From assembly GCA_964106915.2 (NCBI GenBank), contig OZ066917.1: a DNA stretch of 64,000 nucleotides; one strand, written 5' to 3'. The translations under genes were made by a program, and so were the position numbers. This document shows, in pieces, positions 17,465 to 21,548 of this stretch. The stretch comes from Podarcis gaigeae (Eukaryota). Positions within the stretch are counted from its first letter, which is position 1. Every line of letters starts with the position of its first letter. The notes beneath the pieces were generated by a model. It was not told the origin of the DNA and ran no database searches. It saw only the letters and a program-made list of their open reading frames with translations.

Positions 17465-18549
17465 GTCATGTAGTTTGGCTGGATCAGAATCACCATGATT
17501 ATTATCAGAATTACTGCACGCTTCCTCAATGTCTGCTATTTGCAATGGGATCAATTGGAGCTTCCCTCCATTTTGAATAGAAGGCATTGGGGAGTGATTA
17601 CAACTGGGAGCATGGTGGGGCCAAAAGTTTAGAGGCTCCTTTCTTCATGCCACCGTCCAGGACAGCCTCACCTGCTCCACTGTGCAGAGCCAACTACCCG
17701 ACAAACGCCACGTCTTGCTTGACCCAAGGTCATGAGACAAGCTCATTTCTCATCCAGGCAATCTTTTGTGATTCAACCCAATCACAGGAAAGGGGCAAAT
17801 GTTAACTAGATAAGGGAAGGGCATGGTGTGAGGTTTGCAGTTAAAACAGGAACATGCTTAGCAGGTAGAAGCAGATTTTAAGCAGGTTAGCCTACATTTT
17901 TCCTGTGAGGTAAAAAATGAAAAAGTCATTGCTGCCTTGTTGTCTGGCAATTATTGCCCATTCTAAACAGTGGACTGACGTGTAATTCCACGTGTACAAA
18001 ATGTTAAAATGTTGCTGTGGAATGGCAGGCTATTCTGAAGAAGATAAATGCCAGTGCATTTGTAATGTGCCAACCTGCATCTTGCCTCATCCCTTGCTGC
18101 TCAGTAAGCAACAGTGACCCAGCTGCCAGGAACCAACCAAAGCAGCTCCATGCCACCCATTGAGCCACTTCCACCCCCTCCCCCGATAAAATGAGGGTAG
18201 CAAAACCTACTTCTTAATCAAGGCGATTATATAGATTATATGGGTAAAAAAATGGAGACAAGATAAAGCAAATTTTGACATGCTTGGCAAGGGTTTAAGG
18301 AACTATGGAATAGTAAACAAGGGACAATTAACTACAGTCCTGTATAGTTACAGGATGTACTTACATTAAATTTAAGACGCTTTCTTATATAGATAGAGAG
18401 GATCCCAGCTGTTAGAATGCAAATTGTAAATTATTTCTGCTTTGACAATAAATAATACTATAATAAAAGACCCACTGGTAATAAATTAGAAAGGGCTCTT
18501 AGCTCCTCCCAGCTGTTCAGGTTTATGGGTTTTCCCTCTGTTGTGACAT

Positions 18550-18557
18550 TATAAATA
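18550..18557 (+). promoter_or_regulatory. TATA box of the fibulin-2-Na-like gene
   Basis: TATAAATA about 90 nt upstream of a CAG|GTAAAC donor, which leaves a ~65-nt ATG-free first exon. Confidence 0.65.
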
Positions 18558-18579
18558 GCATACCTTCCAGCTGAACAGC

Positions 18580-18645
18580 TACTGAGGAAATATCACTACC
18601 TGGAGACCAAACCACTTGCAACACCCACACCTGAAGCCTATCCAG
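18580..18645 (+). other. Predicted non-coding exon 1 of the fibulin-2-Na-like gene (intron 18646-19643)
   Basis: Starts about 30 nt after the TATA box; ends at ccag|gtaaac; matching acceptor tttgcatttgatccag| at 19643. Confidence 0.6.
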
Positions 18646-18836
18646 GTAAACTAAAGCTATTTCCCCTTTTCATAGATCAGCTAAGCATTTGACCCAATGC
18701 ATGGAATAAAGTTAGAAATAATATTATTATTATTATCATGGAATAAAGTTAGAAATGCTTACTGCATCTGAAGGACAGTTTGCTGTTTTTAAGAAATAGA
18801 AAGAGCTGCACAAGGTCCTTCCTTCCTTCTGCAGTA

Positions 18837-19075
18837 CAGTGGTACCTCGGGTTAAGTACTTAATATGTTCCGAAGGTCTGTTCTTAACCTGAAACTGTTC
18901 TCAACCTGAAGCATCACTTTAGCTAATGGGGCCTCCTGCTGCTGCGCCGCCGGAGCACGATTTCTGTTCTCATCCTGAAGCAAAGTTCTTAACCCAAGGT
19001 ACTATTTCTGGGTTAGTGGAGTCTGTAACCTGAAGCGTATGTAACCTGAAGCGTATGTAACCTGAGGTACCACTG
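18837..19075. mobile_element. Tigger/pogo-type MITE in intron 1 of the fibulin-2-Na-like gene
   Basis: TIRs CAGTGGTACCTC / GAGGTACCACTG, TA TSD; second copy at 62504-62738. Confidence 0.9.
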
Positions 19076-19149
19076 TAATAGGTTTTTAACAGAATGTTAC
19101 CAATTTTTAGCACTCCTCAAATTTTATGAAGCTAAGGTTTGGAAATTTA

Positions 19150-19308
19150 NNNNNNNNNNNNNNNNNNNNNNNNNNNNNNNNNNNNNNNNNNNNNNNNNNN
19201 NNNNNNNNNNNNNNNNNNNNNNNNNNNNNNNNNNNNNNNNNNNNNNNNNNNNNNNNNNNNNNNNNNNNNNNNNNNNNNNNNNNNNNNNNNNNNNNNNNNN
19301 NNNNNNNN
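19150..19308. other. Assembly gap (N run)
   Basis: 159 N. Confidence 1.
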
Positions 19309-19647
19309 AAGGGGTTGTAAGTGGCACTTCCTTGTGCAAGTGGTCCGAGTATCATCGGAGACTGGAGAAGGCAACTATCAGGAGCAGTATGTTGCTTTGA
19401 AGGCAATCCATTGGGAAGTGTACCCTGAGCTCCAGTGTGGCTGATTCAGTGAGCCAATCCGCAATGTGCTATGTAATCAGTGTTTGTGCCCCTGGTGTGA
19501 GAAAATGCTATGCAAATTGGTGTTCTACTGAGAGAGGGCATTAGCTCAGTATTTAAAAAGGCAAAGTTGGGCGAGATAATAGAAAGCAATGAATGAGCAA
19601 AAATTGCTCTGCTGCTAAAAGGACCTCTTTGCATTTGATCCAGAGTA

Positions 19648-20157
19648 ATGAAGCCTAAGCACTTCCTCTGCCTGCTGCTGAGCTGCTGCTTCCTACAAAA
19701 TGGTGGCTGCATGCATCACAGGCCAGACTGTACTGCTGTTCTCTGCCTAGCTTGTCCTGACAATCACGAAGCTGTGACCCGTAAGGACCAGTGCTGTCCA
19801 CGCTGCATCCCTCGGTGCAAGTGCCCTGCGTTTCTGGAGGAAGCTTGTATCCAGGAAGGCTACAAAGATGGCTTCCTTCTCCTGGGACAGTCTGTCATTA
19901 CTGACTTTGGGACCCGAAAGTGCACCTGTGGAGAAGATCATAACATTGTCTGCGCTTCCACTTGCCCTAAGATTTCTCCAGCTTGCAAGTATATAGGAAG
20001 ACCCCAGGATGGCTGTGGAATGTGCGCTTGTCCCACTGATGATGAAAACTTTGTACCTGCTGGTGAAGTCATTGAAAGAGAATGTAAAATTTGTAAGTGT
20101 CCCCCAAATGGGGGGCAGCTTCAGTGTACCTTAACCCCTAAATGCTCGCTAGGGTAA
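19648..20157 (+). CDS. Secreted cysteine-rich protein, 169 aa: signal peptide plus a stand-alone fibulin-2 N-terminal (Na, VWC-like) module (fibulin-2-like, not the FBLN2 orthologue)
   Basis: Intact ORF with a basic/hydrophobic signal peptide (MKPKHFLCLLLSCCFLQNGGC). The 22 Cys of the mature part are colinear with the 22 Cys of fibulin-2 Na. Shared motifs: DCTxVxC, CCxxC, GQSxxxDFGxxxCxC, CxxCxCPxxGGxLxC. Splice acceptor 4 nt before the ATG; purine at -3. Confidence 0.88.
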   Translation: MKPKHFLCLLLSCCFLQNGGCMHHRPDCTAVLCLACPDNHEAVTRKDQCCPRCIPRCKCPAFLEEACIQEGYKDGFLLLGQSVITDFGTRKCTCGEDHNIVCASTCPKISPACKYIGRPQDGCGMCACPTDDENFVPAGEVIERECKICKCPPNGGQLQCTLTPKCSLG

Positions 20158-20364
20158 AAAGTGCCCTGTATCATGGGAGCTGGGTGGTGGTAGTTCCATA
20201 GCATCCTGGTCTTTTAGGGAATACAGTAGTAGAATTTTAGCTTTGAGAGGGACCTTGAGGGTCATCTAGTTCAGAGCCAGAATCTTAAAGCTACATCAGC
20301 TCTCATGGATGCCACTGAACTTTTCCTAAGAATTAAACAGTTACATAATCTATGGTATTATTTT

Positions 20365-20382
20365 AATAAAAATAATAATAAA
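20365..20382 (+). terminator. Polyadenylation signals of the fibulin-2-Na-like gene
   Basis: Two AATAAA (20365-20370, 20377-20382) about 210 nt after the stop. Confidence 0.6.
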
Positions 20383-21548
20383 GATTGGAGTTGAAATATG
20401 TTTGGATCCTTACTTAAATCATTATTTGGTTGAGGCAAATATGGGAAATGCTTGGAATTTTGAAAAATAACTGTGATAATAATGGTTAATAACATATTAT
20501 ATGCATAAATGAGGAAACTTTGGCATACCCAAATGGGATGCAATGGCTAAGTGGCGCCATTAATTGGCTTTCTGTAAAAGCAAACATGGCAAGGTTTTAT
20601 GGTTTGGGATATTTTGGTGTGTTTTTTGCAATTGTTGTTATGCCCCAACCCAGTGAGGGGAGTCATAACTAGTATGTATTCTCACTCTTCACATTATCTA
20701 CAAAAGTACAGTGTATAAATTGCTTGGGTATAATGAATAAAGGGAAGTTCTTCTCCCTCTGTCAAAAATACTAGAACTTGGCAGCAAATGAAATTTCATT
20801 GTCTGGGGATTCTGAAGCAGCAAAAACATGTCTCCGCACAACACAGAATTCATTTATGCAATTCATTCGTAAACGTTGTAGTGATTATCATTAGCTTAAA
20901 GGGCATTAGAAGCGGATTAAACAAATTTGTGGAAGACTTCTCTATCAACAACTGTTTTGAATAATGCTAAATGGGGTCCTTACGTTAGGGATGGGGCACC
21001 TGTGGCCCCCCAGATGCTACAGAAGTCCATCTCCTAGTGGCCAGGACACTCAAGAGTTGGTTGCATTTCATATATGCTAAAGTGAACAGCGAAGCAATCA
21101 GCATTACAGTGGCACCTAGAGACAGTAAGCAAGTATGAAATCACTGACAAAGGGGGACAGCACATCACCACCCATGCATTCCATACACTGAGAAAACGCC
21201 AGGAAGAGAACCCCCAAATGCTTGGGGGCAAGATATCCATGAACAGAACTGCAAAAAAGCAGCTGCACATATTGAATGCATGCACTCATCTTAAAGCTGC
21301 TGCTTTAACAAAATGAACAAAATGGGTTCATAGCAACAAGAAAGACTACAATTCCCCCCCCCCCCTTTTGGTTTCCAATATGGGCTGCTCTTGGCTAACT
21401 GGATTGTTTTTATTACAATACAAGGGGAACTCTGCCGCCCTGCTCTTATATACTCTTATGCTCTTATATATACTGCACTTATATACTCCTCTCCCTGACA
21501 ATCCCTCCACAAGAGACTTGCTTGCTGAATCAAGAAATCATCCCAGCG

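What the first reader, a model, noticed from the sequence alone, without database searches (positions are those of the whole stretch)
19648..20157. Stand-alone fibulin-2 N-terminal (Na) cysteine-rich module as a small secreted protein between the CBS-like gene and PKNOX1
Seen: an intact 169-aa ORF with a signal peptide and a 148-aa mature part carrying 22 Cys, ending 3 residues after the last Cys. Known (recalled human FBLN2): the Na segment has 22 Cys and reads RQDCTGVEC...CCATC...GCAC...DC..GF.RG..PAGQSYFVDFGSTECSC...ISC...CP.LPPNC...DSCPQC...C...AG...CRACHCPDAGGELIC..LPGC. The ORF matches it Cys for Cys: RPDCTAVLC, CCPRC, RCKC, ACIQEGYKDG, GQSVITDFGTRKCTC, IVC, CPKISPAC, DGCGMC, PAG, CKICKCPPNGGQLQC, PKC. 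It lacks the Cys-free Nb, anaphylatoxin, cbEGF and fibulin C-terminal domains. FBLN2 itself is not part of the CBS-PKNOX1 block in mammals. Inference: an exon-derived, strongly diverged duplicate turned a poorly understood ECM subdomain into an independent disulfide-rich secreted protein. Possible roles include growth-factor binder, or eggshell/oviduct, skin, femoral-gland or oral-gland secretion. I know of no described family of this form.
Basis: partly seen in the sequence, partly recalled or inferred. Interest (0 to 1): 0.92.

Follow-up and report, generated by a model that had tools for sequence, protein, structure and literature searches.

The report
Stand-alone fibulin-2 Na-like secreted protein gene
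This lizard gene is real and transcribed, and it encodes a small secreted, disulfide-rich protein that copies only the cysteine-rich N-terminal piece of the matrix protein fibulin-2; birds, turtles and other lizards carry the same gene at the same place under the automatic label "fibulin-2-like", no mammalian copy turned up, and its function has never been studied.

Summary
Window 19648-20157 (+) is an intact 169-aa ORF with a signal-peptide-like N-terminus and a 148-aa mature part carrying 22 Cys. It ends 3 residues after the last Cys.

The homology claim holds. phmmer against 1.84 billion proteins finds true fibulin-2 N-termini (E about 1e-11). A profile-profile comparison with fibulin-2 Na gives 99.7 % probability (E 1.9e-26) over 142 columns. 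Both have 22 Cys. No other fibulin-2 domain is encoded anywhere in the 64 kb.

The gene has two exons: a TATA box, a non-coding exon 1, a 998-nt GT..AG intron, and exon 2 starting 4 nt before the ATG. Spliced contigs from a closely related species show this junction.

It is not squamate-specific. RefSeq "fibulin-2-like" proteins of 159-170 aa exist in many birds, sea turtles, Anolis and two salamanders. The gene lies just downstream of CBS in quail, guineafowl, ptarmigan, loggerhead turtle and an agamid. None was found in mammals, frogs or fishes.

It evolves about ten times faster than fibulin-2 Na, yet dN/dS is 0.15-0.35 and the Cys scaffold is kept. The predicted fold (pLDDT 90) is a chain of VWC/FnI-like modules.

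Function is untested; I infer a soluble extracellular binding module. No paper was found. The scan noted this same stretch before (s1-681039, s1-681071).

The parts
18550..18557 (+). TATA box (tataaata) of the gene's promoter
   Evidence: Read directly in the sequence. Spliced contigs reach back at least to about 18586, roughly 30 nt downstream.
18580..18645 (+). Exon 1, non-coding. The 5' end is approximate; the 3' end is exact.
   Evidence: Contigs of runs X1, X2 and X4 join 18639(+6) to 19638(+6). The donor GT is at 18646-18647.
18646..19643 (+). 5'-UTR intron of 998 nt (GT..AG). It holds a very high-copy interspersed repeat (18786-19109) and an N run (19150-19308, left untouched).
   Evidence: Joint table and depth table; N run. 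An acceptor AG 1-5 nt before the ATG is conserved in quail, guineafowl, ptarmigan, agamid, turtle and locus L008; in L007 the nearest upstream AG lies about 15 nt before the ATG.
19644..20385 (+). Exon 2, holding the whole CDS and the 3' UTR. The 3' end is approximate. AATAAA signals lie at 20365-20370 and 20377-20382. One contig of a related species runs on past 20700.
   Evidence: No splice joint was found downstream of the stop codon.
19648..20157 (+). CDS: 169 codons plus a TAA stop
19648..19710 (+). Predicted signal peptide (aa 1-21)
   Evidence: Hydrophobicity and the -3/-1 rule; predicted helix 3-17. It aligns with the signal peptides of the orthologues and of fibulin-2. Inferred; SignalP was not run.
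19720..19815 (+). Module A (aa 25-56, 6 Cys): C-x4-C-x2-C-x12-CC-x2-C, like the C-terminal half (SD2) of a VWC domain, including a CCPxC motif
   Evidence: Read from the sequence. Aligns to fibulin-2 Na positions 3-34.
19816..20031 (+). Module B (aa 57-128, 11 Cys): the central VWC-like module. It corresponds to the fibulin-2 region that carries Pfam FIBL-2 (PF24532) and keeps the G-x-S-x3-D-F and P-x-D-G-C motifs.
   Evidence: Structure matches to NELL2 VWC and collagen IIA VWC are weak (Z 3.7-4.3).
20032..20145 (+). Module C (aa 129-166, 5 Cys; with Cys128 it gives C1..C2xxC3xC4..C5..C6): an N-terminal VWC half (SD1), fibronectin-type-I-like
   Evidence: In fibulin-2 the Pfam VWC model matches this part at profile positions 1-44 of 57. 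FnI modules align at rmsd 1.9-2.8 A over 37-43 residues, and CCN3 VWC at rmsd 2.2 A over 44.

Best explanation
This is a real, transcribed two-exon gene. It encodes a 169-aa precursor that is cleaved to a roughly 16-kDa secreted protein with 22 Cys, probably forming 11 disulfides.

The protein is a stand-alone paralogue of the N-terminal cysteine-rich Na subdomain of fibulin-2. It is the lacertid orthologue of the uncharacterised 'fibulin-2-like' genes that lie directly downstream of CBS in birds, turtles and other squamates, and probably in salamanders.

It arose by an old partial duplication of the 5' part of FBLN2, at the latest in the amniote ancestor and probably at or before the tetrapod stem. 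It kept the signal peptide and Na and lost everything downstream. Since then it has evolved about ten times faster than the extremely conserved Na of fibulin-2, while keeping the cysteine scaffold under purifying selection.

The fold is a chain of three VWC-derived modules: an SD2-like half, a central VWC-like module and an FnI-like SD1 half.

Inferred, not shown: it works as a soluble extracellular binding module. I put about 0.3 on trapping or presenting a BMP/TGF-beta-type ligand, as the small VWC proteins VWC2/VWC2L and the chordin-likes do. I put about 0.25 on competing with fibulin-2 Na for its matrix partner. The remainder is something else.
For: - ORF and Cys counts.
- Homology to fibulin-2 Na: phmmer E 2e-11 to 1e-7 against proteins that Pfam shows to be fibulin-2, carrying EGF_CA, cEGF, Fibulin_C, ANATO and FIBL-2. 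BLASTP against Podarcis lilfordi fibulin-2 residues 1-200 gives 30 % identity, E 4e-21. hhalign gives 99.7 %, E 1.9e-26 over 142 columns. All 13 Na segments cut at the conserved start motif have exactly 22 Cys. The nearest predicted structure in the ESM Atlas is the fibulin-2 cluster (TM by query 0.48, 136 residues aligned).
- Stand-alone: only fibulin-2 residues 23-176 hit the window. The stop falls at an equivalent place in all orthologues.
- Transcription: contigs of three runs of a related species, about 96 % identical, carry the GT..AG junction 18645|19644 and continue through the stop codon. A galliform contig, L010, is spliced the same way, exon 1 to 3-6 nt before the ATG. The acceptor AG before the ATG is conserved.
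- Orthology and synteny: a PALP+CBS gene lies 2.6-7 kb upstream on the same strand in quail, guineafowl, ptarmigan, loggerhead turtle and Phrynocephalus.
- Selection: dN/dS is 0.15-0.34 among galliforms, 0.27-0.35 between the window and other reptiles, and 0.2-0.3 against the close relative.
- Tree: FBLN2L and FBLN2 are separated by a 99/97 branch, with much longer FBLN2L branches.
- Fold: AlphaFold pLDDT 90. Matches are NEL/NELL2 VWC arrays, CCN3 and collagen IIA VWC, and FnI modules. Language-model features are nearest to VWC2L (0.90).
Against: - No Pfam family reaches even E 10 for the window protein. Of 11 family members, only one touches FIBL-2 (E 0.016) and only one touches VWC2L_C (E 0.049).
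- All matches to solved structures are weak (Z no higher than 4.3).
- Secretion is inferred from sequence only.
- The runs that show splicing are labelled RNA only by a guess, their tissue is hidden, and they come from a related species, not the window's own.
- The variant list behind the close-relative dN/dS was truncated by the tool.
- No binding partner is known, so the mechanism rests on analogy.
- Salamander orthology is unproven. Their branches are very long, and no DNA was obtainable for synteny.
- One unidentified lineage carries a premature stop that removes module C, so constraint is not universal.
Confidence: 0.85

Rival explanations
1. A decaying relic: a dead partial copy of the FBLN2 5' exon whose open frame survives by chance.
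For: The protein diverges fast: 56 % identity between lacertid and agamid and 37 % between lizard and bird. CDS divergence from the close relative (3.7 %) is similar to that of the 3' UTR. One lineage (L008/L009, P0042) has a premature stop and a lost Cys.
Against: The frame is intact, with all scaffold Cys, in lacertids, an agamid, Anolis, a turtle and more than 25 birds. dN/dS is 0.15-0.35 in every pair. Spliced transcripts exist. Position and intron are conserved over roughly 300 million years.
Confidence: 0.03
2. The ORF is only the first coding exon of a longer fibulin-type gene whose downstream exons were missed.
For: In fibulin-2, Na is followed by Nb, anaphylatoxin and EGF domains. Some RefSeq turtle models splice the 3' end onward over 7.6 kb.
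Against: An in-frame stop falls 3 codons after the last Cys here, and at an equivalent place in all orthologues. Contigs read through the stop into the 3' UTR without a joint. AATAAA signals lie about 210 nt downstream. tblastn with full-length lizard fibulin-2 finds no other domain in 64 kb. The next gene, PKNOX1, is on the opposite strand. The turtle genomic ORF is complete on its own.
Confidence: 0.03
3. Functional rival A: a soluble competitor or decoy for the still-unknown conserved partner of fibulin-2 Na, which tunes how fibulin-2 is built into the matrix.
For: It is derived from Na with the same scaffold. Na itself is 72-82 % identical from shark to lizard, which implies a conserved partner.
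Against: Apart from Cys, Gly and Pro turns and a few motifs, almost none of the invariant Na surface residues are kept (30-35 % identity). That argues against the same partner being bound in the same way.
Confidence: 0.25
4. Functional rival B: a fast-evolving tissue-specific secretory product, for example of the reproductive tract, egg, skin or a gland, or with an antimicrobial or protease-related role. The VWC-like scaffold would then serve only as a stable frame.
For: It is a small, fast-evolving secreted Cys-rich protein with a TATA-box promoter. It is kept in egg-laying sauropsids and not found in mammals. Weak structural neighbours include chicken MSMB3 and pacifastin.
Against: No tissue information could be obtained. 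dN/dS below 0.35 gives no sign of positive selection at the whole-gene level. Its presence in salamanders does not fit an amniote-egg role.
Confidence: 0.2

Closest known systems
Fibulin-2 (FBLN2), N-terminal cysteine-rich subdomain Na
   Same: Both have a signal peptide followed directly by a segment of about 150 residues with 22 Cys in the same order. The shared motifs are CC-x2-C, G-x-S-x3-D-F, P-x-D-G-C and C-x2-C-x-C-P-x2-G-G-x-L-x-C. The profile match is 99.7 % over the whole length, and fibulin-2 is the nearest predicted structure.
   Different: It has no Nb, anaphylatoxin, cbEGF or fibulin C-terminal domains. Identity is only about 30-35 %. It does not reach Pfam FIBL-2. It lies on a different chromosome, next to CBS. 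It evolves about ten times faster.
RefSeq/Gnomon 'fibulin-2-like' proteins of birds, sea turtles, Anolis sagrei and Ambystoma (for example XP_015738923.1, XP_060622884.1, XP_069491762.1)
   Same: These are the same gene. They are 159-170 aa with a signal peptide plus Na only. They lie downstream of CBS on the same strand, with the 5'-UTR intron acceptor just before the ATG.
   Different: Birds, the turtle and the axolotl have 20 Cys in the Na-like part. They lack the partners Cys146 and Cys166, which squamates and fibulin-2 keep. These are automatic names only; I found no study of any of them.
VWC2 (brorin) and VWC2L (brorin-like), and the chordin-like proteins: small secreted VWC-module BMP modulators
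   Same: All are small secreted proteins built only of VWC-type modules. VWC2L is the nearest cluster by language-model features (0.90) and is among the nearest predicted folds.
   Different: No significant sequence or Pfam match exists: the VWC2L models are not hit by the window protein, and one family member reaches E 0.049. The module order and Cys spacing differ. BMP binding is untested here.
NEL/NELL2 VWC arrays, CCN3 and collagen IIA VWC domains, and fibronectin type I modules (solved structures)
   Same: These are the best matches among solved structures. Foldseek gives E 1.7e-4 to chicken NEL and rmsd 2.2 A over 44 residues to CCN3 VWC. FnI modules align with residues 125-165 at rmsd about 2 A.
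   Different: The scores are low (TM 0.2-0.26, Z no higher than 4.3) and cover single modules only. They show the kind of fold, not a function.

Membership tests
Fibulin-2 Na-type module (homologues of the N-terminal Cys-rich subdomain) | 22 cysteines in the Na order, directly after the signal peptide | tested here: met
   The mature window protein has 22 Cys. All 13 vertebrate fibulin-2 Na segments cut at the conserved start motif also have 22. They are aligned. A review gives 22 for Na (PMC12456471).
Fibulin-2 Na-type module (homologues of the N-terminal Cys-rich subdomain) | Significant sequence or profile similarity over the whole subdomain | tested here: met
   phmmer E 2.3e-11 and below to fibulin-2, query 20-167. 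hhalign 99.7 %, E 1.9e-26, 142 columns. BLASTP E 4e-21.
Fibulin-2 Na-type module (homologues of the N-terminal Cys-rich subdomain) | Match to Pfam FIBL-2 (PF24532) at its gathering score | tested here: not met
   The window protein has no Pfam hit at E up to 10. Only 1 of 11 family members touches FIBL-2, at E 0.016. All true fibulin-2 proteins score 62-71 bits.
Fibulin-2 Na-type module (homologues of the N-terminal Cys-rich subdomain) | The same three-dimensional fold and disulfide map | tested here: inconclusive
   The nearest ESM-Atlas model is the fibulin-2 cluster, but TM by query is 0.48. No solved Na structure exists among the matches. The disulfide map is not testable here.
Fibulins in the strict sense | A tandem cbEGF array plus the fibulin-type C-terminal module | tested here: not met
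   No EGF_CA, cEGF or Fibulin_C in the protein or anywhere in the window. It is therefore a fibulin-2 paralogue fragment, not a fibulin.
Sauropsid 'fibulin-2-like' orthologue group | 159-172 aa, signal peptide plus Na only | tested here: met
   alignments.
Sauropsid 'fibulin-2-like' orthologue group | Located just downstream of CBS on the same strand | tested here: met
   In the window, the CBS-type exons end at about 14.5 kb and the gene starts at 18.6 kb. The same arrangement is seen in L001, L002/L003, L004, L005 and L006.
Sauropsid 'fibulin-2-like' orthologue group | A 5'-UTR intron whose acceptor lies 1-5 nt before the ATG, with the whole CDS in one exon | tested here: met
   Splice joint; conserved AG; spliced galliform contig.
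VWC domain proteins (Pfam PF00093) | A Pfam VWC match, or the ten-Cys pattern with C2xxC3xC4 and C8C9xxC10 | tested here: inconclusive
   The protein has no Pfam VWC hit. In fibulin-2 the equivalent C-terminal module gives sub-threshold VWC hits of 18-26 bits against a cut-off of 27.6. CxxCxC (146-151) and CCxxC (49-53) are present but sit in different modules. Fold matches to VWC domains are weak.
VWC2/VWC2L (brorin) family | Pfam VWC2L_1st, VWC2L_2nd and VWC2L_C domains | tested here: not met
   None in the window protein. One family member touches VWC2L_C at E 0.049. The resemblance rests on language-model features and overall shape only.

The most novel reading that the evidence does not exclude
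FBLN2L is an ancient vertebrate signalling or matrix modulator. It would have split from FBLN2 at or before the tetrapod stem; the tree even allows a split before sharks and bony vertebrates parted. It survives in sauropsids and salamanders and was lost in mammals. As a free Na module it would trap a BMP/TGF-beta-family ligand or block the conserved partner of fibulin-2 Na. That would give the first functional handle on what the Na subdomain does.
Probability: 0.25. Interest if true: 0.6.

Novelty: new variant of a known kind. Interest (0 to 1): 0.42.

Why it matters
The Na subdomain of fibulin-2 is one of the most conserved parts of the protein. It is 72-82 % identical from shark to lizard, yet I know of no assigned structure or partner for it. 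A natural stand-alone version of about 16 kDa is easy to express. It would allow the fold and disulfide map to be solved and binding partners to be screened for.

The gene is also a clean case of a multidomain matrix protein giving rise to an independent small secreted protein. It has stayed at one locus for roughly 300 million years, evolves fast, and appears to be missing from mammals. That absence may explain why it has never been studied.

For genome annotation, the work shows that the RefSeq sea-turtle models of this gene are mis-spliced at the 3' end. It also shows that the gene has a conserved 5'-UTR intron.

Tried and rejected
- Pfam scan of the protein (E up to 10) and a sequence search of all PDB chains gave nothing. 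A Pfam scan of 11 family members gave only two marginal hits.
- Literature searches for 'fibulin-2-like' and five spelling variants found one unrelated trout paper and then nothing. A search for Na-domain or VWC literature gave only general reviews.
- Genomic DNA could not be obtained for several loci: the Podarcis lilfordi orthologue (withheld), the axolotl gene (file too large) and Phrynocephalus FBLN2 (gene too long). Three tests therefore could not be run: salamander synteny, dN/dS on a complete close-relative CDS, and whether FBLN2 itself has an intron at the same place before its ATG.
- The runs that hold the transcript are coded and labelled RNA only by a guess, so no tissue could be named.
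- The AU test did not settle the age of the duplication. A tetrapod-stem origin is not rejected (p 0.257), although the best tree puts all gnathostome FBLN2 on one side.
- No second copy of the gene is in the window.
- No joined exon model was needed, because the whole CDS lies in exon 2.
- The N run at 19150-19308 was left as it is.
- No contig was taken for human, and read laying was given 2401 letters.
- PKNOX1 was located only by three short motifs recalled from memory. I used them as a lead and then read the result off the window's own translation.
Full report
**1. Observation**

Window 19648-20157 (+) is an ATG-to-TAA frame of 169 codons. The protein has 26 Cys. After a cut behind residue 21, 148 residues remain with 22 Cys, and the last Cys (166) is followed by three residues and the stop.

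The N-terminus has the build of a signal peptide. It has two Lys, a hydrophobic core at 5-16, and small residues at -3/-1. AlphaFold predicts a helix at 3-17. The mature part is about 16 kDa with pI 6.1 and no N-glycosylation sequon.

The neighbours are also as stated:
- CBS-type exons lie on the + strand from about 3.9 to 14.5 kb.
- PKNOX1 exons lie on the minus strand at about 36.8 and 40.0 kb, with a CpG island at 52-53 kb.

The gene is therefore convergent with PKNOX1. PKNOX1 was found with three short motifs recalled from memory. That was a lead only, and what I report is the window's own translation.

**2. It is a gene, and it is transcribed**

I laid the contigs of four small runs of a closely related species (about 96 % identical; 'RNA' is the tool's guess) on 18300-20700. 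Three of the runs carry a joint that skips 998 nt with GT..AG ends. It joins 18645 to 19644, four bases before the ATG, and the contigs then continue through the stop codon into the 3' UTR without any further joint.

Upstream of the small exon lies a TATA box at 18550-18557. The contigs reach back to about 18586. The transcription unit is therefore:
- TATA box;
- non-coding exon 1 (about 18580-18645);
- intron 18646-19643;
- exon 2 with the whole CDS, and AATAAA signals at 20365-20382.

The TATA-like element at about 19560 that lies just before the ORF is inside the intron. The intron also holds a very high-copy repeat (18786-19109) and a masked N run, which I left alone.

Because the CDS lies in a single exon, no joined exon model had to be built or searched.

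A galliform contig (L010) is spliced in the same way, joining an exon of about 66 nt to a point 3-6 nt before the ATG. An acceptor AG 1-5 nt before the ATG is present in quail, guineafowl, ptarmigan, an agamid, the loggerhead turtle and one further squamate-like locus (L008); in L007 the nearest upstream AG lies about 15 nt before the ATG. The gene structure is therefore old.

**3. Relatives**

The word-indexed search found three proteins of similar length: Podarcis lilfordi (94 %), Phrynocephalus forsythii (56 %) and an unnamed contig (57 %). All 22 mature Cys are invariant among them.

The exhaustive phmmer search of 1.84 billion representatives found 39 proteins. The short ones are RefSeq 'fibulin-2-like' proteins of Anolis sagrei, sea turtles, galliforms, a crow and the axolotl, plus a Pleurodeles hypothetical protein.

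The long ones (339-1176 aa) match the query over residues 20-167 with their own residues about 25-175. The ten hits I scanned with Pfam included seven long proteins. Three carry cbEGF-type domains, two of them also Fibulin_C and one an anaphylatoxin domain, and all seven carry the FIBL-2 domain. The named ones are Xenopus and coelacanth fibulin-2 and teleost proteins.

A profile of eleven family members then found 36 short proteins. Among them are 'fibulin-2-like' entries from crane, swift, pigeon, falcon, parrot, bustard, eagle, duck, cuckoo and many passerines. No mammal, frog, crocodilian or fish protein of this short form appeared in either search. That is absence from annotated proteomes, not proof of absence from genomes.

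**4. Homology to fibulin-2 Na**

Fibulin-2 Na segments from shark to bird all have 22 Cys when cut at the conserved start motif. A review states the same for the human and mouse protein, with Nb free of Cys (PMC12456471).

In the joint alignment the Cys columns correspond. A handful of non-Cys positions are shared: G-x-S-x3-D-F, P-x-D-G-C and C-P-x2-G-G-x-L-x-C.

The profile-profile comparison of the short family against fibulin-2 Na gives 99.7 % probability, E 1.9e-26, over 142 columns that span the whole of both. BLASTP against the Podarcis lilfordi fibulin-2 N-terminus gives 30 % identity, E 4e-21.

tblastn of that full-length fibulin-2 against the window hits only residues 23-176, at 19705-20148. 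True FBLN2 lies on another chromosome-scale contig in both P. lilfordi and Phrynocephalus (contig lengths).

The one failed test is Pfam. The 30-residue FIBL-2 model, which scores 62-71 bits in fibulin-2, is not reached by the window protein. Only one of eleven family members reaches it, at E 0.016. That measures how far the copy has diverged.

**5. Orthology, age and rate**

In quail, guineafowl, ptarmigan, loggerhead turtle and Phrynocephalus the gene lies 2.6-7 kb downstream of a PALP+CBS gene on the same strand, as it does in the window. The locus is thus at least as old as the sauropsid ancestor.

The salamander proteins suggest a tetrapod age, but their synteny could not be checked and their branches are very long.

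In a maximum-likelihood tree, all 17 fibulin-2 Na sequences (sharks to birds) sit on one side of a 99/97 branch and all 14 short proteins on the other. Branch lengths in the short family are about ten times longer. Taken at face value, the split predates the shark and bony-vertebrate divergence. An AU test, however, does not reject a tetrapod-stem origin (p 0.257), and long-branch effects are likely, so the age stays open.

Fibulin-2 Na itself is remarkably conserved, at 72-82 % identity between coelacanth and sharks, teleosts, lizards and birds.

**6. Selection**

Nei-Gojobori dN/dS values are:
- 0.15-0.34 among three galliforms;
- 0.27-0.35 between the window and an agamid, an unnamed squamate and the turtle, although dS is near saturation there;
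- 0.2-0.3 between the window and the contigs of the close relative, which keep the frame and all 26 Cys (the variant list was truncated by the tool, so this figure is approximate).

This is purifying selection that is strict on the scaffold and loose elsewhere.

**7. Anatomy of the protein**

Read against the VWC pattern, the mature protein has three modules:
- Module A, residues 25-56 (six Cys, ending CC-x2-C), looks like the C-terminal half of a VWC domain.
- Module B, residues 57-128, forms a central VWC-like module. It is the region of the FIBL-2 model in fibulin-2.
- Module C, residues 128-166, carries C..CxxCxC..C..C, the N-terminal, fibronectin-type-I-like half of a VWC domain. This is the part that Pfam VWC touches below threshold in fibulin-2.

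AlphaFold, run with a 46-sequence alignment, gives pLDDT 90. Structure searches gave the following:
- Foldseek's best solved matches are the VWC arrays of chicken NEL and of NELL2 (E 1.7e-4 to 9e-3). They are followed by VWF and mucin assemblies, FnI pairs and the CCN3 VWC domain (rmsd 2.2 A over 44 residues).
- VIA-align gives only weak scores (Z no higher than 4.3), but they fall in the same families: NELL2 VWC for 31-107, and FnI modules at rmsd about 2 A for 125-165.
- Among ESM-Atlas models the nearest is the fibulin-2 cluster (TM by query 0.48, 136 residues), followed by VWCE, VWC2L and NELL.
- Language-model features are nearest to VWC2L (0.90).

One detail may be useful. Squamates and fibulin-2 have Cys146 and Cys166, while birds, the turtle (intact genomic ORF) and the axolotl lack both. 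I infer that these two Cys form one disulfide.

**8. How it probably works**

Shown: a conserved, spliced, selected gene for a small Cys-rich protein with a signal-peptide-like start and a VWC-type predicted fold, derived from fibulin-2 Na.

Inferred: it is secreted and acts as a soluble binding module. Two specific versions are plausible:
- It binds a BMP/TGF-beta-type ligand, as other free VWC proteins do (VWC2, VWC2L, chordin-likes; this rests on my own knowledge of those families). I put this at about 0.3.
- It competes with fibulin-2 Na for that subdomain's partner. I put this at about 0.25. It is weakened by the loss of nearly all conserved non-structural Na residues.

A tissue-specific secretory role is the third option. 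Nothing here discriminates among them, because the tissue of the runs is hidden and no partner was tested.

**9. Novelty and verdict**

It is not a squamate invention and not unknown to databases: pipelines already name it 'fibulin-2-like' in more than 30 species. I found no paper on it, so as a biological entity it is uncharacterised.

I class it as a new variant of a known kind, namely a free Na/VWC-type module. Interest is moderate. Its value lies mostly in giving experimental access to the unexplained Na subdomain, and in being an old gene that mammals seem to have lost.

The scan's earlier notes on this same stretch (s1-681039, s1-681071) agree with this. The two-exon, TATA-driven unit of s1-681071 was confirmed here.

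Noticed in passing
L008:2383-2900 and L009 (Logan contigs; proteins P0005, P0042, P0043): In an unidentified squamate-like lineage the orthologue has an in-frame TGA where lizards have the Cys128 codon. Module C is still legible downstream in the same frame, but with Cys160 changed to Tyr. One of the three sequences has also lost Cys123. This is either a truncated two-module form or the start of decay.
   Followed up: partly
L002:13032-13544 (Caretta caretta): The RefSeq/ENA sea-turtle 'fibulin-2-like' models (P0044, P0006 and others) splice away or read past the 3' end. The genomic ORF is nevertheless intact, at 170 aa, and ends like the bird proteins. The models appear to be mis-annotated.
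   Followed up: yes
window 20083-20145 (Cys146, Cys166) compared with birds, turtle and axolotl: Squamate proteins and fibulin-2 keep 22 Cys. Birds, the turtle and the axolotl lack exactly two, the first and last Cys of module C. This suggests that the two form a disulfide that has been lost more than once, or kept only in squamates.
   Followed up: partly
window 18786-19109: A very high-copy interspersed repeat lies inside the 5'-UTR intron. Summed contig depth is 1e5 or more in all four runs, with many loose ends. It looks SINE-like.
   Followed up: no
window 36.6-40.1 kb (minus strand) and 51.7-53 kb: PKNOX1 coding exons lie on the minus strand, and a CpG island (GC 0.54, CpG observed/expected 0.87) is probably its promoter. 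PKNOX1 is convergent with the fibulin-2-like gene.
   Followed up: partly
L004:1-2829 (Phrynocephalus) compared with L001, L002, L005, L006: The gene model upstream of the agamid orthologue has PALP-CBS-PALP and 1050 residues, whereas birds and the turtle have a single CBS of 532-557 residues. This fits a tandem CBS duplication in squamates and the 'CBS-like' gene noted in this window (s1-681077).
   Followed up: no
P0036 and P0040: Two unrelated-looking proteins of about 205 aa consist of tandem repeats of a unit of about 35 residues (PDC-x-AV-x-C ... CCP-x-C). The unit matches only module A (query 23-56). A free SD2-like half-VWC unit therefore exists as a repeat elsewhere.
   Followed up: no
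L010:1-216: The first 216 nt of the spliced galliform contig match nothing in the 20-kb quail, guineafowl or ptarmigan loci. This may be a further upstream exon or a chimeric contig.
   Followed up: no
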